NCBI GenBank assembly: GCA_001179505.1
Contig: CDMY01000666.1
Coordinates: 124,001-188,000, forward strand
DNA: 64,000 nt
Direction of reading: 5' to 3'
DNA from: Vitrella brassicaformis CCMP3155
Lineage: Eukaryota; Protista; Chromerida
Shown here: positions 6,901-31,208 of the stretch, piece by piece
How the letters are laid out: each line of letters opens with the position of its first letter
Numbering within the stretch: position 1 is the stretch's first letter
Made by a program: the position numbers and the translations under genes
The notes under the pieces: generated by a model
What the model was told of the DNA's origin: nothing
Databases searched by the model: none
What the model saw: the letters and a program-made list of their open reading frames with translations, nothing else

Positions 6901-8110
6901 TCTTCCCTTCCATCAGGTTACTCCCAAGCCCTCCAAGCCTGCGGTTCCAAGGTTGGATTTCGCCAAGATCCAGCCTAGACCGGAGACCCACGAGTCCGTC
7001 CTGCGCCGTGTCAGAGAGCATGCCACGCCATCAGCGCTCGGCAGCCGCCGCAAGGCGCCGCACACCACTCGGCACGCCCGGCCGCTGCTTGTTGGCCAGG
7101 ACACTGCCCGCTCCCTCGCCTCCACGCTGCCGCTGCTCTTCAGAGACCGCCTGCGCTCGCTGTCGATGGGCACGATGGAGGGCGCTGAGGAGGACACGTC
7201 GTCGCGGGCCTACACCTCTCGACAGCATAGCGAACTCACCAATATATCGTCCCCGCGTCTCAACGAGCAGCTGTACGTCCTGGAGGCGCTGCACGCCAAG
7301 CTGGACGACATGCGGGAGGCGGAGGAGGTCATCATCCGCAAAGAGGGGGTGGCGGGGATGGCGGGTATGGCTGGGGAGGAGGGCCGCCCCCTGACATTCG
7401 CAGAGACACTGCGTCAGCTGCTGGCCGAGAACGAGTCCCTCAAGAACAGGCTGGAGCAGCTGAGCAGAAAGAAGAGACCCTCCATCAGTGTGCCGCCCGA
7501 ACCAAGGAAACCAGAACCAGAGGAGAAGCCGGAACGCCCGGCCGTGCCGTACGATGCCGAGAAGCGGCTGCTGCGTCGCCAGGTGGAGTTGCTGCTGGAG
7601 GAGATGGGCGAACTCAAGGCACAAACGGACCGATCCAGACCGAGAACCTTCTTTGTGCCCCGCTCACAGGGGCCGATGCCTGCAGCCTTCGCCACCCCGC
7701 CTCCACCAGCCACCACGTCCATCCCCCCATTGCCGATGTTGCCGCATGCCCAGTCACCGCTGAGGCCGCTCATGCGTCCCCTGCCCTCACCCGAGAGATA
7801 CGAGAGACACTCGTGTCAGCGGGTATGCTGCCCGAGGGAGCCTCACAAGGCAGTGGTGATGCTCCCGCCTCGCTTTGCATCCCCATTGACGGCCCGGCTG
7901 GCGGCGCCGCAGCACCAGCCACTGCCGCAGCAGGGCGAGCAGCACGAGGTCGAGAGGAGCAGGGCGAGCAAGTGCTGCGGGCGGCAATCTTCGAGGGCGA
8001 GACAGGGCAAGTGGGACAATACAGTACGAAGGGGCTCAGAGGGAGTCGTGAGGGAAAGGTGGGTGGGGGACCTGAAGAGGGTCCGTCGGTCGTCGTGTGG
8101 ATGGAAATAA
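3991..8110 (+). CDS. Large hypothetical coiled-coil / low-complexity protein (multi-exon)
   Basis: ATG 3991; GT-AG introns join heptad-rich exons (IISQLEEEIRRK, QELERARNELDRSKQ, LEDNAALQSRLLDFERQVAKLEDERR). The exon from about 6459 runs in frame into the 478-aa ORF ending at 8110. Confidence 0.7.
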
Positions 8111-8404
8111 GCCATTCTGTATCTAGGCAGACGTACACACACTTTGTCGTTTTTCTCTGAGTCGTGTGGAAATGAAGAAATGGTGTCTCTTGCTTCTGTT
8201 GATGGCCTGGCCTTAGTGTGGTCTGGTGAATGGTTGATGTGCCTTCATCGATAGGACACGGCATGACCCGACACATATGGCAGATGTCACACACTGTCCA
8301 TTAACTACATCTCATCAAGTCTGCACATCTATCAGTCCTCACTCACTACCGTCCGCCGAGAATAATCAATTCTACCCCAAGTCATCCTCCACTCGCCTCC
8401 ACAC

Positions 8405-9959
8405 TTACATCGACTGCAGATGCGTCACCAGGGTCACGAAGCAGCAGAATACGTCAACGCAGAATATGGCACCGTAGACCATGTATTTGAATTCCTTCGC
8501 GTCGTCGCCTTTCAGGCCGTCGGCAGCTATCTGGATGAGGAGGCTCGTATCGGACACGCTGAGGCACCGGCGGATGGCTTTCCACAACTCATCCATCGGC
8601 GGGCACAACAGGGACTGGCACACCCAGGCACACAGCACCATTCAACAGGACGAAGTGGGCATCGGGAGGTGTGCATACGTGTGTGTGTGTGTGTTTTTTT
8701 CTTTCTTTCTTTCTTTCTTTCTGTCCGTCTGTGTGTCCTACCTCAGTAATATCGAGGAAACAATAAGTTGGCCACATGACGAATTGCAGGATGGCCTGCG
8801 CAAAAGGAAATCGCGGAGGGCAGACACATGCGTCGTTGTTTGCTGACGACATGCCCCTCACCCAATATAGCCCTCACCAGTAAGAAGCGAATGGGGGTGT
8901 GGAGCAGGAAGACGAAGACGAGCATCTCGTTCGTTGCCATCCAGGTGTCCAGCAACCGGCGGTAGCGTCCACTCTCATGACGAACCAAACTGTAAGTGAC
9001 ACAAGCCATCGAGCGTGGATCAATCGCCTGCCATCCATACAGCTCCCGTACTTGGAAGAGCAAATTTGATTGTGTCCCGGATGGCCACGGCGATAGCACT
9101 GGAGGCACATGTCCGAAAGACAGCCAGAGTGGCAGCCCCACCTGAGACAACGGCATGCACAGACAGATGCTTCGGTTTCCTGTGTGTTCCGCCTGTCTCT
9201 CACGCGAAATTGCAATGGCGGTCGTAACAGCCCGAGCCACCGTGCAAATGACATACATCGTGCGCAGCGACTTGAAGGCCTGCTTGTTGTATGTAATGGG
9301 TCATGGCTGATAAGATCGTCTGCACTGCGCCTACTTGTATGTGGCCGGGGCTGCCGCAGAGGAAACGCAATCTGCAGCCAAAGACACAAAATTCGCATCA
9401 TCCCCTGCCCTGCAGCCACGTCCATGCCCTCCTGCACACATACTCCGTGTAGGCGAGCGGTGCCGTCATCATCCAGTAGCCCGCAGCCGAAGAACCAACG
9501 ATCCAAGCGATCAGCACCACAACCAGAGGCAGCAGGCCAACGCTGCAGATGCTGAACACAAAAAGAGAAGACGCATGGACCATTCCACCAATGGCATGGA
9601 TCTGAGCGCAGTTGGTCCATCGACGAACGTGCTGCTTTGCGTACTAGTAGATCTGAAGATCTTTCTGTACGGCGTTCGCTTGCCCACGGGTACCCGGGGC
9701 CTGCAGATCAGTGCCGGGCTCTGGATCTGGCTGCATCTTGAAACCCTCAAGGACCGCACGACATCTCTCGCGGCCATGATCGCCGAAACGTAAACACTCG
9801 CATCCATCTATATACCTCCTCGGCTGCCTTGGAGTCGCCCCCTTTCTCCTCCTTCCCCCGCCACTCGTAAAACAGAAGTCGCCTAGCACTTGGTAGGTTT
9901 CGAATCGCCTCAGTCTGCCATTCTGCAAGGTAGAGAAGGCCATGCAAGAAGACTAACAT
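8405..9959 (-). CDS. Hypothetical multi-pass membrane protein with a Cys/His-rich loop
   Basis: A hand-built model of about 9 exons with GT-AG introns gives ...YYICSVGLLPLVVVLIAWIVGSSAAGYW...CLSDMCLQCYRRGHPGHNQIC...EMLVFVFLLHTPIRFLLAILQFVMWPTYCF...YGAIFCVDVFCCFVTLVTHLQSM*. The start codon is uncertain. Confidence 0.5.
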
Positions 9960-23989: not shown

Positions 23990-26900
23990 CTCATCTGTAG
24001 GGGGGTGGGAGGGAGGGAGGGAGGGAGGGAGGAGGGAGGGATAAGCCTGTCTGTCTGGATCTGAGTCTGTTTCTCATCGACTGACTATGTGTGTGTGTGG
24101 GGTGGGGTGGCGTGTGCCTCCATGTGTGTGTGCATGGGTCGCTCGCGTGATTTGCCATTTTGTTAAGGGCTGGCCGTGTATACATACGTGCATGCGTCAT
24201 GACGTCTGCATTTTTGCATAGGACGGGAGCAAGGGACGGGGCGGGGCGGGTTGCGGCGGGGCCAGGGGGGGTTGCAAATTAGTGAGGTTGGCCAGCAGAA
24301 ACAGACTACCACGGCACCAGCAAGTTGTCTGCACGTCCACGCAGCTGTGACAAGGGCTCACAGAGATAGTAGACGACGGGCAGCCGGACACGACACGAGG
24401 GTTTTTTTCATTCACTGGGTCGTCGACTGCCTGACTGACTGACGACTGATGGCTCCATCCGTCATCCATCCGTGTGGTTGGCGTCGTGTCCATGCGTTGA
24501 TATCTGACTGACTGCATAGATAGCTAAGACCTGTGGATGGATGGTTGGACACGGGGCGGTGCTCATTCAGTCAAGCAAGCCTTCGTGGCTGAATGGCAAA
24601 GCGTGCGTGCGTGGGTGCGTGAGGGGGCCCTTACTACTACCTGCAGATAGACAGACTCACACACTCACTCACAGAGAGACGACTCCTTGCTGTACATGTG
24701 TTGCCGAGGTGCCTGCTAATGGTGTGTCCAAATCTTTTCTTCTCTGACCGACCGGCAGCCTTCCTTGCCTAGACAGAAAACAACTTGACACGTACATACA
24801 ATCCACACATACAATCCATACAAAACACACAATGCGTAATCGCTTCCATACCATAAGGTCGGCACTGACTGCACAGCCAGCACAGAGGGGTGCGGGAGGG
24901 CCGGTCTTTTGTGCGTTTTCGTCGGTCGTACTTTCATACAATGTCAATAGACAGATAGACACAACAGGCAGGCAGGCAGGCAGGCCAGCTTCCCTTTCTG
25001 CTGCTCCGTCAGGCAACCCGCTGCTGCAACCAACCCGTTTTTGAAATGATGATGACCTCTATATGGATCTCGATGGATGCCCGTCGGGTGCCCGGTGCCC
25101 GCTCCCTCTGTGTGTCCTCGTCTGTGTGTGTGTGTGTGGGTGGGTGGTGGGTGTGTTCATGTGGTGTGGTGACGGCTACATGCTTACATACATACATACG
25201 TACGACAGGTGGATATGCTGTGCATGCATCACTGGCTCGGCACAACAGAGGATAGGAGAGGAGAGGAGAGGGAGGGGGGAAATGTCAGATGGATGTGTGG
25301 ATTGGGGGGGGGTGGGGGGGTGGATCGGTCGGCGCGGTTCTGTTTTCCTCTCGTCGATCGGTCCCTTTATTCATTCCTTCTGTCTGTCTGTCTGTCTGTC
25401 ATCTCGTGTTTGTTTTGTTGCTGTGTTGTGTTTTGCCGCCGGCCGGCCGGTATTTGTATCTAAATGGATGAGTGGCAAGCAACCAAGACGTCTGACTGTC
25501 TGTCTGTCTGTCTGTTTTCATGAATACTGCGGTCGGTCGGCCTGGTCGAAGACGAATGCCCGGATGCCCGGATGGATAGATGGATGGCTGGATGGTTGGT
25601 CTTTGGCGCCTCCCTTTTGTGGACGGGAGGTGCCGGCCGGGCCGTCTGAACGTTTATGTACGTGTCGTACGTGCGTGCGTGCATGTGTGCGTCGGTCGCA
25701 TCTAGTCATCATCATCTATCTCCCTAGGTCGCTTTCTCTCGGTGCCTGCCTGTTTGCATGTCTGTGCCTGTCTGTCTGTGTGGCATCTCTGTCTGTGTCT
25801 GCGTGTCTGGAGCCGTGTGGTGTGGTGTGCGCTAATCAATCAACAAGGGTGGTAATTACACTGGTACTACTGACTGACTGACTCACTGACTCATCGTGAC
25901 GCGGTGACAAGGCAGCTAAGTCCGGCCGTCACGCGCACACACGTCCATCCATCCATCCATCCCTGTCCGCCTGCACGCCTGCTTTCCTGTTTGTCTGGAT
26001 CCAATCAGTCACATCAATTTGCAGGTGGCTGGCTGGCCGACTACCCACCTTGTCCGTGCACTCACCTCACTCGCCGACCGACTGACCCCTTTTGTTGACG
26101 ATTCGTTCCATCCTTGCCCTGCCTTGCTGTGTGTGTGCGTGCGCGTGATGGATGTGTGTGTGGATGGTGGCTGCCTTTGTGGCGGTGCGGTGGTGCATGG
26201 ATGTGTGTAGATGAGTGCGTGTATCCGTGTGTGTGGCCCTAGTACAGCGTTGTTCGTCACGTCTAGTCACTCGAATGGATGGATGGATGGATACACCACA
26301 TGGGGAGAGGGAGAGAGAGCAGCGGTGGGTGGACTCACACACACATGTGCTACGTGTGCACAGCTGTAGAGCTCTCATTCACCCACCTCACAGAGACACA
26401 CACACACACACATTCATGAGGCTAATGCTCTCAACGGAGAGGAGAGGACCACTCTGACTTCACTCACACACAAATGCTGGCGACCGGTTTTTGGGTATTG
26501 CTGTCACTCACTCACTACTGACTTGCTCTCTCTGTGTGTGCATGGCTGCCTTGTATCTTACCGCCTTCCCTCCCTCCCTCCCTCCCTCCCTCCTTGCTGT
26601 CTCTTTTTCCCCTTCTTGTTGGTCTGTCTCGGCGTCTCTCTCTTGGCGTGTCTGTCGTATGGCCGCCAAGAGCTCTGGTTTAATCCTCCGTGGCTGTGAT
26701 GTTCTCCCTCCCTCTCTCTACCTGTGTGTGTGTGTGTGTGTGTGTCTTGCATACTCAGTGCACCTGTCTGCCTGTCGACCTGCCTGCATGCATCAACCTC
26801 ACATGCTGCCTTCCTGCCTTAGCGGACCGGTGTGTGGCCAGCACCCACCCCATCTGTTCTCCACCTGGCTTTGTCTGTCTACCGATTTCTCAGTCCTATC

Positions 26901-27650
26901 GGCCCACACCCACTCACTCCTTGGATCCTCTCTCGCTTTATTCGTCTGTCAGGCTGTCTGTCTGTCTGTCTCCTCCTGCCGTCCGGTAATGTGGATGTAC
27001 ACGTACGTACGGACGTCTGTCTGTCTGTCTGTCTTGCCTGCCTGTTCGCGCCTGCCTCTGTCTGTCGACCACAGCGTACCATTCCATTCCTTGCCCTCCC
27101 TTCCTGAGCTGAGCTGGGCCCTCCCCTCTGCGTACTCATGGTGCACACGCCATACACACACACATACATACACTTTCACAACTTCACACATACGTGGCGT
27201 GCCTTTCTGACCTCACGTGTGTCCATACCTCTCGTGTGCGCGCGTGTGTGAGTGTGAGCGTGTTCCTGTCTGTGTGTGTGGTGTGGTGTGTGTGTCAAGT
27301 TTTTCATTTGTACGTGGGGACACGGTGGGCCGACTGACTTGACTGACCTGACTGACTGTCTTCTCTGTCTGTCTGCGTCATTACTTTATCACTCCACTCA
27401 TCCATCCCATTACATGACCCACCACTGATGGTCGACGAACGAACGGGCGAATGGGCGGGCGGACAGACGGAGAGATGGAGATGTGGAGGAGGCAGCGCTG
27501 GTTGTGTGTGTGTGTGTGTGCGTGTGTGTGTGCGTGTATATGTATGCGCATGTGCATACATACATACGGAGACTTCACACGCGCTAGAGTGAATCCGTCG
27601 GATCACAACGTACCTTGACATGAGAAAGTCGCCATGATCATCGATTGCAC
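23990..27650. repeat. Microsatellite-rich non-coding tract
   Basis: Dense (TG)n, (TCTG)n, (GATG)n, (CAGG)n and (GGGA)n runs; ORFs here are repeat-derived (VCLSVCLS, HPSIHPS). Confidence 0.75.
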
Positions 27651-27654
27651 TCCA

Positions 27655-28881
27655 TCATGTCACCCCCACCGGCTCACCCATCGATCCTCTCACATAGCAG
27701 GAAGCCATATCAAGTGTCTCCAGCAATCGCCCCACACCTCGATCAGCTGCATGCAAATCTATCAGATACTCGTTAGCCCAGAAGTCAGCTTTGACTCGCA
27801 TTCTCGCGATCACATCGGGAGTGTACAGGCGGATGACGGCGCATGAACAATGTCGTCTGTGAGCAGAACCATTGACGAGACGCCGATGCATGAGCGTGTC
27901 CATGGGGATGAGATAAAGATGACGAGGAGATGGGAGGGAGAGGGCCAGGAGGTCGAAGTCACTGTCTTCGTACATTTGGCTTTTGCGACGGCCATTCAGC
28001 GTCCCCGCACACTTTTTGAGGATCACGTGCAGAGAGTTTGTTTCCGATCGAGCATATGCCGTCTTGTGCTGGACTCGAAAGCGCCTCCCTTCCCACACCC
28101 ACACACCATCGACAGTTGTGTGCTCATGGACAGGCAGCCGAAAGAAAGAGATGCCTGCAGTCGTCAATAGGGGGTCCCACGCTCTCACCGAGGCTTCTCC
28201 CTTCTGATGGCTTGCCGAGCGCTGCTTCATGATGCCCCCCAATGGAGATTTGATGAATAATGGGTCCGCGTAAGCCCTCGTCAATCTGTCAGATAGCGCG
28301 TCGGGGCCCTCCAAAGCTGTCGTGCATCGAAAGCCAGGACAGTCCCATTGCCCGTTCTCGAATACATGGATGTCCCCGCATCCTCTGACTGCGGTAAGCA
28401 TTGTCCCGCAGTACAGCCAGATCCGGTAGTCTCTGAGAGCCACACAGACGACCGGCATAGTGGGATATTGGTTGGTTCGCCGAAAAGGCCAAGACCGACC
28501 ACGACAGCCATTCTTCTCCTTGCATGTCTTCACTTGAACAGGCAGCCATTCATCCTTCTCCACACCAAGCGGCCGCACTGCAAGGTCCGCATGTGCATAC
28601 TCGTAAGTTCTTCTGACCTCCAGCTGTGTCCTCAGCAAGTCCACAACACACTGCACACCGGAATTGGCAATAAGAATGTTGGCTGAAGCCTTAGAGAAGA
28701 ATCGCCCACGGCAGAGAGCCACACCAGTGGGAGCCACAGGTTGCCGTGCAGGAGGCGACCGAGGAAGGGCCAGGATTGCGCCAGTGCAAATGTGCAAAGG
28801 GCCCACCAGCAGACGTCTGGACACGTTGGAGGTGGCGTGTCGCATCATCATAAGCGAACGGGCGGGATCGCTCGCTGCCAT
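27655..28881 (-). CDS. Intronless tandem PD-(D/E)xK nuclease-like protein (I-Ssp6803I/PDDEXK_5-like) with putative mitochondrial presequence
   Basis: 408-aa single-exon ORF. Domain 1 ADLAVRP...WLPVQVKT; domain 2 E...VDGVWVWEGRRFRVQHKTA...YEDSDFDLLAL...LYLIPMDTL. The N-terminus is Arg/Ser/Ala-rich with almost no acidic residues (SRRLL...RGRFFSKAS). Confidence 0.8.
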   Translation of the reverse strand: MAASDPARSLMMMRHATSNVSRRLLVGPLHICTGAILALPRSPPARQPVAPTGVALCRGRFFSKASANILIANSGVQCVVDLLRTQLEVRRTYEYAHADLAVRPLGVEKDEWLPVQVKTCKEKNGCRGRSWPFRRTNQYPTMPVVCVALRDYRIWLYCGTMLTAVRGCGDIHVFENGQWDCPGFRCTTALEGPDALSDRLTRAYADPLFIKSPLGGIMKQRSASHQKGEASVRAWDPLLTTAGISFFRLPVHEHTTVDGVWVWEGRRFRVQHKTAYARSETNSLHVILKKCAGTLNGRRKSQMYEDSDFDLLALSLPSPRHLYLIPMDTLMHRRLVNGSAHRRHCSCAVIRLYTPDVIARMRVKADFWANEYLIDLHAADRGVGRLLETLDMASCYVRGSMGEPVGVT

Positions 28882-28923
28882 ACCTCGCAGCTAAGCTCGC
28901 AGCCGCTCTTCTAAAAGGCAACC
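28882..28923. promoter_or_regulatory. Very short divergent intergenic region (bidirectional promoter candidate)
   Basis: 42 bp between ATG 28881 (-) and ATG 28924 (+). Confidence 0.45.
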
Positions 28924-30516
28924 ATGCCGACAGCCAGCTGTGCAGCATGCGGTCAAGAAGAATGCAGCAAGGTCAGAAATTGCGATCATTTCATGTACAT
29001 ATCTTCTTTCTCATGCGCTGCCCTCGTTGTCAGTGTTGCGCCAAGTGCCAGCGGGTCTGCTACTGCTCGAAGGTCAGCAGAGAGATCTTTATCTTCGCGA
29101 CGTCGGCATCCATCCCTCTTTTGTCTGCGCAGGAGTGTCAGGTCGCTCATTGGAAGGCAGGGCACAAACACGAGTGCGGCGGGATGAAGCAGGCCACAGA
29201 AGGAGCCACACCTGCAGCTGACACATCTACTGAAGCGGCCTTATCAAAGGAACAGCCTATCTGCAGCATCTGCAAGGAGAACAAGGCGGCCATGGTTGGT
29301 GCCATCGATGTTTGAGTGTGGCTGGACCATTGCTGTTTCCTTGTGAGTGAGTTTGTGTGTGTGTGTGTGTGTGTGTGCATCAGCGTGTCAAGTGTGAGGT
29401 GTCTGCTGGCGATGCGACAGAGTCCGACACGCTCGACATATGCTCAGCGGTGAGATGTCTGCTGCCGCACAAGACGGCAGCTTCTTGTTTGTTCTTGTGT
29501 GCATGCTCTTGTTTCTGCAGGAGTGTTTGGGTGTGATAGAGGAGGCGACAGCCAAGATGATTGAAAGCCAGACGCCCGGCTGGTCGCTGCACCTCGAGAA
29601 GTGCGCCGTGTGTGAAGAGCCCGCCACTGTGGTAAGACCTGCACGGACGCAGCACTCATCGACCTGCTCTTGTGATGTTGTCGTAGCGTCGCTTTGGTGT
29701 GTCGTGTGACGCTGACAGTGGGCATGTCGTGTTCGACTTCGAGGACTACTGCTCTGACGTGAGAAAACGCACACTCATATCGACAGCTTGGGGATGGTCT
29801 GTGTGTATGTCCATGTGCATGAATGCATTGATGCAGGGTTGTTACAAGATCGACTGTGACCTAGCGCAGAAGGACATACGGCGCATGCACCGGGGCGGCG
29901 GCTCTAACATGGGCGGGCCGGACATCCACACAGACGAGAATGGCCGAATCGCCGACTTGCTCAACATGGCAAAAGCAGGTACCGTTCAAGAGCCACAAAA
30001 AAGAAATGCGGTGATCTCTGTGTCGTGCATGCAGGCCACGTGATAGAGCTGCGCTTCAAGTCTAACATCACCAATCTGACCCACCGGCTGTTCCACCAGG
30101 CGGCAGCCGTCTACACGGGGGCGCAGCGTGTGATCGACCAAGACGCATCACGTGCACATGCCGACATCGAGCAGCTGGTGGCCGACCTCAAGACCCGCAT
30201 CGCCAGCCTCGAGACAGACCTGCCGACTAACCGCGGGATATTCAGTGAGTATGGCGAGGTAAGTGCCCACTGTGGTGCACACCGAGCATTTGAGTGCGTG
30301 TTGCTCATGCAGGCGGTGCTCGAGTATGCTCTCCTGAGCAACTTCTTCGGCTGGATGGACAGCGGGGCGTATGAGCTTGTGCTGGCTGGTGTGTCGAGTG
30401 TGAATGCCGTCGTCGACACCAAGGCAGATGAGCTGGTGTTCGTGCTGCTGCCTGGCTGGGACTGTGAGCAGGTGGTATATACGTCGGGAGGCTTTTTGCG
30501 TCGGTGCGGCGTGTAA
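28924..30516 (+). CDS. zf-MYND domain protein (multi-exon)
   Basis: Spliced N-terminus CAACG...CAKCQRVCYCSK|ECQVAHWKAGHKHEC is a canonical MYND finger; further CxxC pairs (CSICKE, CAVCEE); helical C-terminal exons; stop 30516. Confidence 0.8.
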
Positions 30517-31208
30517 GGTCTAAGATACACGGTGACTGACTGTCACTTGGGTGTACTAGGTCTATTCCATGTATGTGTGTATGTGCATAGCTAGATCAGA
30601 TCCGTGCATTTATCGGTTGTGCTATAGTCCTTCGTTTCTGCATCAGACTTCAGCAAGGAAGTGAATCATCTGTCCGTCCCCCCTCTCTTGCTCGCCCATC
30701 CACACATAGATAAACCATTGCCACACGTCTGTCGACACAGACAGACAAACAGACTCTCAAGGAAGCTGCGATGTGCCATACACGGCCGTCTCCAGGCGTT
30801 GCTTTCCTCTCTTCAGTCCCTTTCTGTTGCACTGAAGGCAGCCCAATGGCATGCCAGCCAGGGTTCTTCTGCCGCCCACCGCCTTGCAGGTCCCGGCCCG
30901 TCTCGGCGGCAGGAGGCGGGACGCGCCATGCCGATGCCGATTCACGGCTCCGTCTTTCCGTTTCTGCTGCCTCGGGGCTGCACCACCTTCTGAAGTCCTC
31001 TCCTGGGCGGCGCGCCAGCTGTCACGAAGACCAGCCGAATGTAGAGGAGAGGGCACCACGAACTCCCCAGGAAGAAATTCCACACGTGGCGCATTGGGGA
31101 GGGAGGAGGAGGGCAGCGAGACGCGGGAAAGCTCGCAGACTGCGGTAAACTCGTTGATTTCTAACGGCTTTTTCTCTTCACCAAAGCAGGGGAGGCACCG
31201 TGGCGGGA

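What the first reader, a model, noticed from the sequence alone, without database searches (positions are those of the whole stretch)
27655..28881. Nuclear-encoded, organelle-targeted tandem homing-endonuclease-like (PD-(D/E)xK) protein
Seen: an intronless 408-aa ORF with a presequence-like N-terminus and two nuclease-like repeats (AD...VQVKT; VD...EGRRFRVQHKTA...YEDSDFDLL...LYLIP). Known: the group I intron homing endonuclease I-Ssp6803I (PDDEXK_5 family) has, as I recall it, the same D...VQVK...Y...DFDF...FYVFP pattern and acts as an oligomer; myzozoan mitochondria have highly fragmented genomes and rRNAs and use RAP-domain proteins of a related fold. Inference: a domesticated, internally duplicated selfish nuclease imported into the mitochondrion, possibly for mtDNA fragmentation or recombination or RNA processing. 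No mobile-element boundaries were seen around it.
Basis: partly seen in the sequence, partly recalled or inferred. Interest (0 to 1): 0.75.

Follow-up and report, generated by a model that had tools for sequence, protein, structure and literature searches.

The report
Giant-virus-type double restriction-fold nuclease gene
This intronless nuclear gene of the alga Vitrella encodes a protein made of two restriction-enzyme-like domains; the unnamed family is otherwise found in giant viruses and a few related protists, and the Vitrella protein carries an organelle-import-like leader where the viral proteins have a zinc finger.

Summary
Window 27655-28881 (-) is an intact 408-codon, intronless ORF in Vitrella brassicaformis.

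A high-confidence model (pLDDT 93) has two PD-(D/E)xK domains. The N-domain matches SPARDA DREN and restriction enzymes (Z about 9). Both keep a near-invariant D...QxK.

Three things are new:
- The two domains are anciently duplicated homologues, not a local repeat.
- The architecture defines an unnamed family of 557 representatives. Those whose setting was examined, and all full-length structural relatives, are Nucleocytoviricota proteins with an N-terminal zinc ribbon. Nuclear copies occur in Vitrella, Chromera, Alphamonas and Symbiodinium, some fused to AP2.
- In Vitrella it is a birth-and-death family: 7 loci, 4 with one disabling lesion each. The window copy is intact, constrained (dN/dS about 0.2-0.3, dS saturated) and at best weakly transcribed.

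Organelle import rests only on leader composition (8 Arg, 1 acidic residue in 71). Homing-endonuclease status is not supported: there is no intron, intein or element boundary. The helix-1 glutamate is missing or displaced in the Vitrella copies, so catalysis is uncertain.

The scan had already noted another giant-virus-type nuclease family, of a different fold (HNH), elsewhere in this genome.

The parts
27655..28881 (-). Complete intronless ORF, 408 aa plus stop. It encodes the two-domain restriction-fold protein.
   Evidence: The exact protein is called on Logan contigs collinear with the genome. No public protein model of 224-714 aa close to this ORF was returned; the best hit was 52% identical.
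28681..28881 (-). N-terminal leader, residues 1-67. The composition counts quoted here cover the first 71 residues, up to the N-domain profile start: Arg-rich and acid-poor, disordered in both models. It stands where the viral relatives have a zinc ribbon.
   Evidence: In the first 71 residues: 8 R, 1 K, 1 D, 0 E; highest 12-residue hydropathy 1.72. pLDDT below 50 for residues 1-73. Viral N-termini carry Cys/His zinc-ribbon motifs.
28258..28680 (-). N-domain, residues 68-208: a divergent PD-(D/E)xK domain not covered by any Pfam model.
   Evidence: VIA-align: SPARDA DREN 9qcc_Y Z 9.4, NhoI Z 9.2, Eco15I-N Z 8.8, RecU Z 6.8. Homologous to the C-domain by hhalign, P 84.5%, E 6.9e-6.
28528..28587 (-). 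N-domain motif D99 ... Q116-V-K118.
   Evidence: D in 79 of 82, Q in 78 of 82, K in 81 of 82 sequences. The helix-1 Glu column (E in 63 of 82) holds Ala72 here.
27685..28221 (-). C-domain, residues 221-399: an I-Ssp6803I / MepB-like PD-(D/E)xK domain.
   Evidence: 2ost_A Z 15.4, rmsd 2.6 A, 148 of 148 residues aligned; MepB Z 11.4; Hjc Z about 9. Profile versus PDB sequences: MepB E 3.8e-7, 2OST E 2.5e-6. Pfam PDDEXK_5 23 bits, below the threshold of 26.1. phrog_5018 E 6e-8.
28063..28110 (-). C-domain motif D258 ... Q271-H-K273.
   Evidence: Each residue is present in 81 of 82 sequences. Y304 is invariant and D308/D310 are near-invariant. The helix-1 Glu column (E in 74 of 82) holds Gly228, with Glu229 next to it.
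28882..28923 (.). A 42-bp spacer between the ORF's ATG and the likely ATG (28924) of the divergent, spliced, MYND-like gene on the + strand.
   Evidence: ORF list and sequence. Spliced contigs of the + strand gene in runs X1 and X2.

Best explanation
The ORF is an intact nuclear member of an unnamed family of two-domain restriction-fold (PD-(D/E)xK) proteins.

Shown:
- Each chain carries a divergent N-domain and an I-Ssp6803I/MepB-like C-domain.
- The two domains are ancient homologues of each other, and both keep D...QxK.
- The full two-domain architecture is otherwise seen in giant-virus (Nucleocytoviricota) proteins, which have an N-terminal zinc ribbon. It also occurs in nuclear genes of Vitrella, Chromera, Alphamonas and Symbiodinium, whose N-termini are leader-like or AP2-like.
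- In Vitrella it is a lineage-specific birth-and-death family. This copy is intact and under purifying selection.

Inferred mechanism: it binds, and probably cuts, double-stranded or branched DNA. I-Ssp6803I and the SPARDA DREN domains work only as four-domain assemblies, with two active and two structural domains. Two chains of this tandem protein would supply four domains, with the C-domains the likelier active pair.

Inferred, at about even odds: the Arg-rich, acid-poor leader that replaces the viral zinc ribbon imports the protein into a mitochondrion or plastid.
For: Fold:
- AF2 model with pLDDT 93.1 and pTM 0.87.
- Foldseek top PDB hit 2OST, E 1.2e-7, TM 0.80 on the target.
- VIA-align gives separate matches for each domain.
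- Profile against PDB sequences: MepB E 3.8e-7, 2OST E 2.5e-6.

Family:
- 557 representatives at E <= 1e-3, most with N- and C-domains in the same order.
- Two relatives lie on contigs that carry giant-virus marker genes: Pox_A32 and Pox_VLTF3 on one; UDG, dUTPase, a protein kinase and RING proteins on the other.
- Full-length structural matches are limited to Aureococcus anophagefferens virus, Klosneuvirus, Hyperionvirus and Nucleocytoviricota clusters of the ESM Atlas.
- Named eukaryotic members.

Ancient duplication: hhalign of N- against C-domain, E 6.9e-6.

Motif conservation.

Four-domain working unit of the closest relatives: PMC3384342 and bioRxiv 10.1101/2025.04.08.647717. The isolated DREN domain is monomeric and inactive.

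Constraint and turnover: dN/dS 0.19-0.29; genus-specific clades with support 96-100; pseudogene lesions.

Leader. The same character is seen in the Alphamonas, Chromera and P0014 relatives.
Against: - No biochemical or localisation data exist.
- The helix-1 glutamate is E in 63 of 82 N-domains and 74 of 82 C-domains, but is Ala72 and Gly228 here, with Glu229 adjacent. From memory, it is catalytic in Hjc-type enzymes. Catalysis may therefore be weakened or lost in the Vitrella clade.
- The Pfam PDDEXK_5 score is below threshold.
- RNA evidence is thin. Two short contigs at depth 4-6 in one RNA-like run and none in a second, against 13-60 for the neighbouring genes.
- The ORF is absent from the public protein set at 224-714 aa.
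- No targeting predictor was available. Arg/Ser/Ala-rich disordered N-termini are common in GC-rich alveolate genomes.
- The dimer-of-tandems assembly was not modelled.
Confidence: 0.62

Rival explanations
1. A domesticated nuclease is imported into the mitochondrion (or plastid), where it is needed for organellar genome fragmentation, recombination or junction resolution, or for RNA processing.
For: - Leader composition here and in every intact chrompodellid copy; it replaces the viral zinc ribbon.
- The C-domain also resembles Hjc and RecU junction resolvases, Z 7-9.
- Purifying selection.
- Family members are present in the Alphamonas transcriptome.
Against: - Four of seven Vitrella loci are pseudogenes.
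- Paralogue clades are genus-specific rather than conserved orthologues.
- Expression is weak.
- The helix-1 Glu is lost or displaced.
- None of the 30 relatives whose source was looked up is apicomplexan, although apicomplexans share the fragmented mitochondrial genome. That was only a sample.
- There is no localisation evidence.
Confidence: 0.25
2. A selfish or dispensable nuclear gene family. These would be free-standing endonuclease genes related to giant-virus genes, through gene exchange whose direction is unresolved. They duplicate and decay in the host genome without a host function, and the window copy is simply a copy that has not yet decayed.
For: - The recent copies are multi-copy, intronless and scattered beside unrelated host genes.
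- Four of seven copies carry a single nonsense or frameshift lesion.
- dN/dS is about 0.45 among the closer copies.
- Expression is low and the gene is absent from the public annotation.
- AP2 fusions in relatives resemble the modular endonucleases of mobile elements (from memory).
- Another giant-virus-type nuclease family was noted in this genome (an unchecked note).
Against: - There are no terminal repeats, target duplications or shared flanks.
- The family is old in the lineage. The most divergent Vitrella copy matches in several frames, as if it had acquired introns, and the genera form separate clades.
- The leader-like N-terminus is maintained across genera.
- dN/dS of 0.2-0.3 for the window copy indicates constraint.
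Confidence: 0.3
3. A catalytically dead nucleic-acid-binding protein. The restriction fold would be kept as a DNA- or RNA-binding scaffold, as in RAP-domain proteins or MepB, and not as a nuclease.
For: - The helix-1 Glu is replaced in the N-domain and displaced in the C-domain in all Vitrella copies. P0006 has no Glu there at all.
- The strongest sequence-profile hit to a solved structure is MepB. I recall it as a nucleic-acid-binding protein without a demonstrated specific nuclease role.
Against: - D...QxK is strictly kept in both domains.
- The same Q-for-acid substitution occurs in I-Ssp6803I, an active homing endonuclease (alignment; its activity per PMC3384342).
- Glu229 lies directly beside the displaced position.
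- No RAP match was found.
Confidence: 0.2

Closest known systems
I-Ssp6803I (PDB 2OST), group I intron homing endonuclease of Synechocystis; Pfam PDDEXK_5 (PF11645)
   Same: The C-domain superposes on all 148 residues (Z 15.4, rmsd 2.6 A). It shares the motifs D...Q-x-K, Y..DFD and (F/L)Y(V/L)(F/I)P. The enzyme works as a four-domain assembly with two DNA-contacting and two structural subunits, which a dimer of this tandem protein could imitate.
   Different: I-Ssp6803I is a single-domain, roughly 150-aa protein encoded in a bacterial intron. This gene encodes two fused, diverged domains plus a leader, is free-standing in a nuclear genome, and scores below the PDDEXK_5 threshold (23 against 26.1 bits). 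The helix-1 Glu is displaced.
Unnamed Nucleocytoviricota proteins (e.g. UniProt A0A076FH51 of Aureococcus anophagefferens virus, A0A1V0SIJ8 of Klosneuvirus, A0A3G5A8P9 of Hyperionvirus; ESM Atlas 'hypothetical protein' clusters)
   Same: Same two domains in the same order. Full-length structural match with TM 0.66-0.76 over about 290-350 columns. HMM E-values from 1e-20 to 1e-11. Same conserved residues.
   Different: The viral proteins are Lys-rich, start with a conserved Cys/His zinc-ribbon module and keep the helix-1 Glu in both domains. The Vitrella protein is Arg-rich and has a leader in place of the zinc ribbon. No function has been described for either group.
SPARDA DREN nuclease domain (e.g. 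PDB 9QCC)
   Same: Best structural match of the N-domain (Z 9.4). DREN is active only as an I-Ssp6803I-like tetramer of two active and two structural domains.
   Different: DREN is fused to APAZ and partnered with a short Argonaute in bacterial defence. No Argonaute context is evident here. The window protein has no PADLOC hit.
MepB (PDB 4LQE; Pfam MepB-like PF08877)
   Same: Strongest sequence-profile hit among solved structures (E 3.8e-7), structural Z 11.4. Relative P0117 passes the MepB-like threshold with 37.5 bits.
   Different: MepB is a single-domain bacterial protein. The window protein itself gives no MepB-like hit.
Archaeal Hjc and bacterial RecU Holliday-junction resolvases
   Same: Same fold, Z 7-9 on the C-domain. 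They act as dimers on branched DNA.
   Different: The similarity is much weaker than to I-Ssp6803I. They are single-domain proteins and carry E-x-K rather than Q-x-K (from memory).

Membership tests
PD-(D/E)xK (restriction-endonuclease-like) superfamily | Core alpha-beta-beta-beta-alpha-beta fold | tested here: met
   Both domains match. C-domain Z 15.4 to 2OST; N-domain Z 9.4 to DREN and 9.2 to NhoI. Foldseek probability 1.00. Model pLDDT 93.
PD-(D/E)xK (restriction-endonuclease-like) superfamily | Asp before strand 2 and (D/E/Q)-x-K in strand 3 | tested here: met
   D99/Q116/K118 and D258/Q271/K273, conserved in at least 95% of 82 sequences.
PD-(D/E)xK (restriction-endonuclease-like) superfamily | Acidic residue on helix 1 that contributes to the metal site | tested here: inconclusive
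   The column is E in 63 of 82 N-domains and 74 of 82 C-domains. The window protein has Ala72 and Gly228, with Glu229 adjacent.
PD-(D/E)xK (restriction-endonuclease-like) superfamily | Metal-dependent phosphodiester cleavage | not testable with these tools
   Needs a biochemical assay.
Pfam PDDEXK_5 (PF11645) / I-Ssp6803I-like | Score at or above the Pfam gathering threshold | tested here: not met
   23.0 bits against 26.1; E 8.7e-5, residues 240-332. Relatives score 16-24 bits.
Pfam PDDEXK_5 (PF11645) / I-Ssp6803I-like | Significant profile and structural similarity to I-Ssp6803I | tested here: met
   Family profile against 2OST: E 2.5e-6. Z 15.4 over the whole chain.
Homing endonuclease (functional class) | Encoded in a self-splicing intron or intein, or as a mobile free-standing gene beside its target | tested here: not met
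   Free-standing nuclear ORF, 42 bp from the start of a spliced host gene. The only flanking repeats are microsatellites. Paralogue loci share no flanks.
Homing endonuclease (functional class) | Cleaves a long cognate site in alleles that lack the element | not testable with these tools
   Needs a cleavage assay. No candidate target is known.
Unnamed giant-virus two-domain family | Collinear N-domain plus C-domain | tested here: met
Unnamed giant-virus two-domain family | N-terminal Cys/His zinc-ribbon module | tested here: not met
   Absent from the window protein and from all the Arg-rich, eukaryote-type members examined. Present in viral-type members.
Organelle-imported protein | N-terminal targeting peptide | tested here: inconclusive
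   The composition fits: net charge +8, 1 acidic residue in 71, disordered. No predictor was available. The hydrophobic stretch at residues 24-39 is too weak to call a signal peptide.
Organelle-imported protein | Organellar localisation | not testable with these tools
   Needs tagging or organelle proteomics.
RAP domain proteins (PF08373) | Match to the RAP profile | tested here: not met
   No RAP hit even at E <= 10.

The most novel reading that the evidence does not exclude
Myzozoan algae (chrompodellids and dinoflagellates) share a two-domain I-Ssp6803I-type nuclease with giant viruses. They exchanged its zinc-ribbon DNA-binding head for an organelle-import leader in chrompodellids, or for an AP2 domain in dinoflagellate-like lineages. 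That would create a self-contained four-domain (dimer-of-tandems) endonuclease that acts on organellar DNA, and would be a candidate for the enzyme behind the recombination-driven, fragmented organellar genomes of this group.
Probability: 0.15. Interest if true: 0.85.

Novelty: new variant of a known kind. Interest (0 to 1): 0.58.

Why it matters
The restriction fold and I-Ssp6803I are well known. The fused two-domain family is not. It has no Pfam model covering the N-domain, no name in UniProt or the ESM Atlas, and I found no paper describing it.

It is common in giant viruses: 557 representatives at 50% clustering. It has repeatedly changed its N-terminal module between zinc ribbon, AP2 and import-like leader.

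- For giant-virus biology, it defines a widespread candidate nuclease with a built-in version of the two-active, two-structural domain assembly recently shown for SPARDA.
- For alveolate biology, it adds a virus-related nuclease family with possible organellar targeting. That makes the old question of what cuts and recombines myzozoan organellar genomes experimentally approachable.
- If it proves to be a decaying selfish family, it documents virus-host gene traffic in chromerids.

Tried and rejected
- BLASTP of the N- against the C-half found no similarity. Only profile-profile comparison showed the homology.
- AF2 on the 4-sequence alignment gave a useless model, pLDDT 43, replaced by the 82-sequence run.
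- The word-indexed protein search found only Vitrella paralogues. Repeated with an 18-sequence eukaryote-type alignment, it added nothing. These blanks reflect the method's limited reach, not absence.
- The search for related loci failed: A2 was too diverse, and P0034 found no close relative in IMG/VR.
- The primary I-Ssp6803I structure paper (PMC1864971) is not held. Its catalytic residue numbers (E11, D36, Q49, K51) are therefore from memory, consistent with the alignments.
- Recent viral insertion (an endogenous giant-virus region) was rejected. The neighbours are spliced host genes, the ORF's GC is 56%, like the window, and the Vitrella copies form their own deep clade.
- Direction of virus-host transfer was left open. 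The split has support 75, the tree is unrooted and a composition warning was raised.
- The L003 rows in the dN/dS table are out of frame and were ignored.
- PMC9651163 describes Symbiodiniaceae genes related to Marseilleviridae 'restriction endonucleases'. I could not establish whether that is the same family.
Full report
**Observation.** Window 27655-28881 (minus strand) is an uninterrupted 408-codon ORF with an ATG start. The genome is Vitrella brassicaformis. The exact 408-aa product is called on two Logan contigs that match window 29375-27511 at 100% without gaps. No public protein model of 224-714 aa close to this ORF was returned; the best hit was 52% identical. The locus therefore seems to be unannotated.

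**Fold.**
- Pfam gives only a sub-threshold PDDEXK_5 hit on residues 240-332 (23 bits against a threshold of 26.1).
- A 4-sequence profile touches just one solved protein, 2OST, at E 0.2.
- The exhaustive HMM search with that profile returned 557 representatives at E <= 1e-3 and 151 at E <= 1e-10.
- An 82-sequence alignment built from those hits (A2) raised the sequence evidence to MepB 4LQE at E 3.8e-7 and I-Ssp6803I 2OST at E 2.5e-6.
- The same alignment gave an AlphaFold2 model of residues 68-408 with pLDDT 93.1 and pTM 0.87.
- Foldseek ranks 2OST first, at E 1.2e-7 and TM 0.80 on the target.
- VIA-align separates the two domains. Residues 221-399 align to all 148 residues of I-Ssp6803I (Z 15.4, rmsd 2.6 A), to MepB (Z 11.4) and to Hjc (about 9). 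Residues 68-208 align to the SPARDA DREN domain (Z 9.4), NhoI (9.2), Eco15I-N (8.8) and RecU (6.8), and to EcoRV, PvuII and DpnI (5-6).

**The repeats are ancient.** BLASTP sees no similarity between the two halves. The N- and C-domain profiles do align, with their E..D and Q-x-K elements in register (hhalign P 84.5%, E 6.9e-6). HMMs for each domain hit relatives only in the corresponding position. The duplication therefore predates the whole family and is not an event in this gene.

**Conserved residues.**
- D99, Q116 and K118 are present in 78-81 of 82 sequences. D258, Q271 and K273 are present in 81 of 82 each. Y304 is invariant.
- Gln in the second 'acidic' position is also what I-Ssp6803I, an active enzyme, has (alignments; PMC3384342).
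- There is a caveat. The helix-1 glutamate column is E in 63 of 82 N-domains and 74 of 82 C-domains. In every Vitrella copy it is Ala or Ser in the N-domain and Gly in the C-domain. Glu follows one residue later in this copy, and there is none in P0006. Catalytic competence of the Vitrella clade is therefore uncertain.

**Who else has it.**
- Named relatives are six further Vitrella proteins; Chromera velia proteins, including forms of 700-1044 aa with the unit repeated; four Alphamonas edax transcriptome proteins; and one Symbiodinium protein.
- Most of the remaining listed hits are Lys-rich, roughly 380-aa metagenomic proteins with a conserved N-terminal Cys/His zinc-ribbon module.
- I examined the setting of two of them. 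One contig carries Pox_A32, Pox_VLTF3, DUF5832, DUF5899 and Pol X. The other, of 156 kb, carries UDG, dUTPase, a protein kinase and RING proteins. These are giant-virus contigs.
- BFVD gives full-length structural matches only to Aureococcus anophagefferens virus, Klosneuvirus and Hyperionvirus proteins, all uncharacterised.
- The ESM Atlas gives TM of about 0.75 over about 290 residues, only to 'hypothetical protein' clusters that are 94-100% Nucleocytoviricota. Single-domain PDDEXK_5, NUMOD1+PDDEXK_5 (phage) and MepB clusters match the C-domain alone.
- Some Arg-rich relatives carry sub-threshold AP2 hits ahead of the nuclease unit. One of them, P0117, passes the MepB-like threshold.

The variable part of the family is thus its N-terminal module: zinc ribbon, AP2 or a leader.

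**Phylogeny.** A quick maximum-likelihood tree of 90 sequences gives genus-specific clades: Vitrella 96, Alphamonas 97, and Chromera plus two unknowns 100. The Arg-rich, eukaryote-type sequences fall on one side and the zinc-ribbon viral type on the other. That split has support of only 75, the tree is unrooted, and composition bias is flagged. A shared origin with giant-virus genes is clear, but the direction and number of transfers are not.

**Dynamics in Vitrella.** There are seven loci, all beside unrelated host genes, with no DNA similarity beyond the ORF.
- The window copy and L001 are intact single ORFs.
- L014 (P0006, the most divergent copy) matches in several frames, as if it had introns.
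- L002 has a frameshift.
- L003 has a stop plus a frameshift.
- L012 and L013 each have one nonsense codon at otherwise conserved positions.
- dN/dS of the window copy against its paralogues is 0.19-0.29. dS is saturated, so this is qualitative only. Among the closer copies it is about 0.45.

This is a birth-and-death pattern. The window gene is one of the constrained survivors.

**Context and expression.**
- Only (GT)n/(CA)n microsatellites flank the gene.
- Its ATG lies 42 bp from the probable ATG (28924) of a divergent MYND-like gene.
- Runs X1 and X2 carry contigs that skip introns of that neighbour, so they behave as RNA.
- On the ORF, X1 has only two short contigs (27718-27934 and 28433-28678, depth 4-6) and X2 has none, against 13-60 for the neighbours. 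X3 and X4 are collinear DNA.
- Expression is therefore weak or conditional. Contigs cannot rank levels, so this is soft evidence.

**Leader.** The first 71 residues, up to the N-domain profile start, hold 8 Arg, 1 Lys, 1 Asp and 0 Glu, against 10.4% acidic residues in the rest of the protein. They are disordered. Their most hydrophobic 12-residue window averages 1.72, which is not a convincing signal peptide. The same character recurs in the other Vitrella, Alphamonas and several Chromera copies, without sequence conservation between genera. That is what targeting peptides look like. No predictor or localisation data were available, so I put organelle import at about even odds.

**Mechanism (inferred).**
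- I-Ssp6803I is a tetramer in which two subunits contact and cut DNA and two are structural (PMC3384342).
- SPARDA DREN domains form the same two-active, two-structural tetramer. [quoted passage not shown]
- A chain that already contains two such domains would need only to dimerise to rebuild the four-domain unit.
- The C-domain is closest to I-Ssp6803I and has a glutamate adjacent to the helix-1 position. It is the likelier DNA-cutting member. The N-domain lacks that Glu in Vitrella and Alphamonas and is the likelier structural member.
- In the viral proteins both sites look complete.

**Verdict.** The fold assignment and the I-Ssp6803I relationship are confirmed. 'Homing endonuclease' and 'internal duplication' are not supported. 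Mitochondrial import and a role in organellar genomes remain an untested inference, weakened by pseudogenisation, weak expression and the altered helix-1 position.

The main added finding is that this is a eukaryotic branch of a large, unnamed giant-virus family of fused double restriction-fold proteins. That suggests such nuclease genes are a recurrent class in Vitrella.

Noticed in passing
window 28924-31000 (+): A divergent neighbouring gene with a MYND-type Cys/His pattern. Its probable ATG at 28924 is only 42 bp from the nuclease ORF's ATG. RNA-like contigs show exons at 29131-29294, 29520-29630, 29837-29974, 30031-30256 and 30311 onward. One contig skips the two middle exons, which may indicate alternative splicing.
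   Followed up: partly
window 26000-27493: A well-covered transcript-like contig (depth 13-60 in the RNA-like runs) ends at 27493, about 160 bp downstream of the ORF's stop. It lies in a region full of (GT)n and GTCT repeats. The laid contigs leave out 27146-27297, which may be an intron or a repeat the tool skipped. The gene was not identified.
   Followed up: no
P0007-P0013, P0015-P0017 (Chromera velia, e.g. Cvel_25860, Cvel_1798): Chromera has proteins of 650-1044 aa in which the N-domain occurs twice, about 450 residues apart. This looks as if the whole two-domain unit had been duplicated again in one chain, giving four domains in a single polypeptide.
   Followed up: partly
P0149 (Symbiodinium sp. 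CCMP2456, CAE7727060.1): The gene model joins an AP2-like N-terminus and the nuclease unit to a histone deacetylase domain (PF00850, E 9e-49). This may be a real fusion or a merged gene model.
   Followed up: no
L010 (ENA contig, 70.8 kb) around 8001-9200: An Arg-rich relative (P0157) lies on a densely packed, seemingly intron-free contig with Snf7, RING and Tudor-like genes. It may be a GC-rich giant virus or a compact picoeukaryote.
   Followed up: no
L014:3001-4500 (Vitrella, P0006 locus): The most divergent Vitrella paralogue matches the family in four pieces in different frames, and its gene model removes about 294 nt. Either introns were acquired after a long residence in the genome, or it is another decayed copy.
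   Followed up: partly
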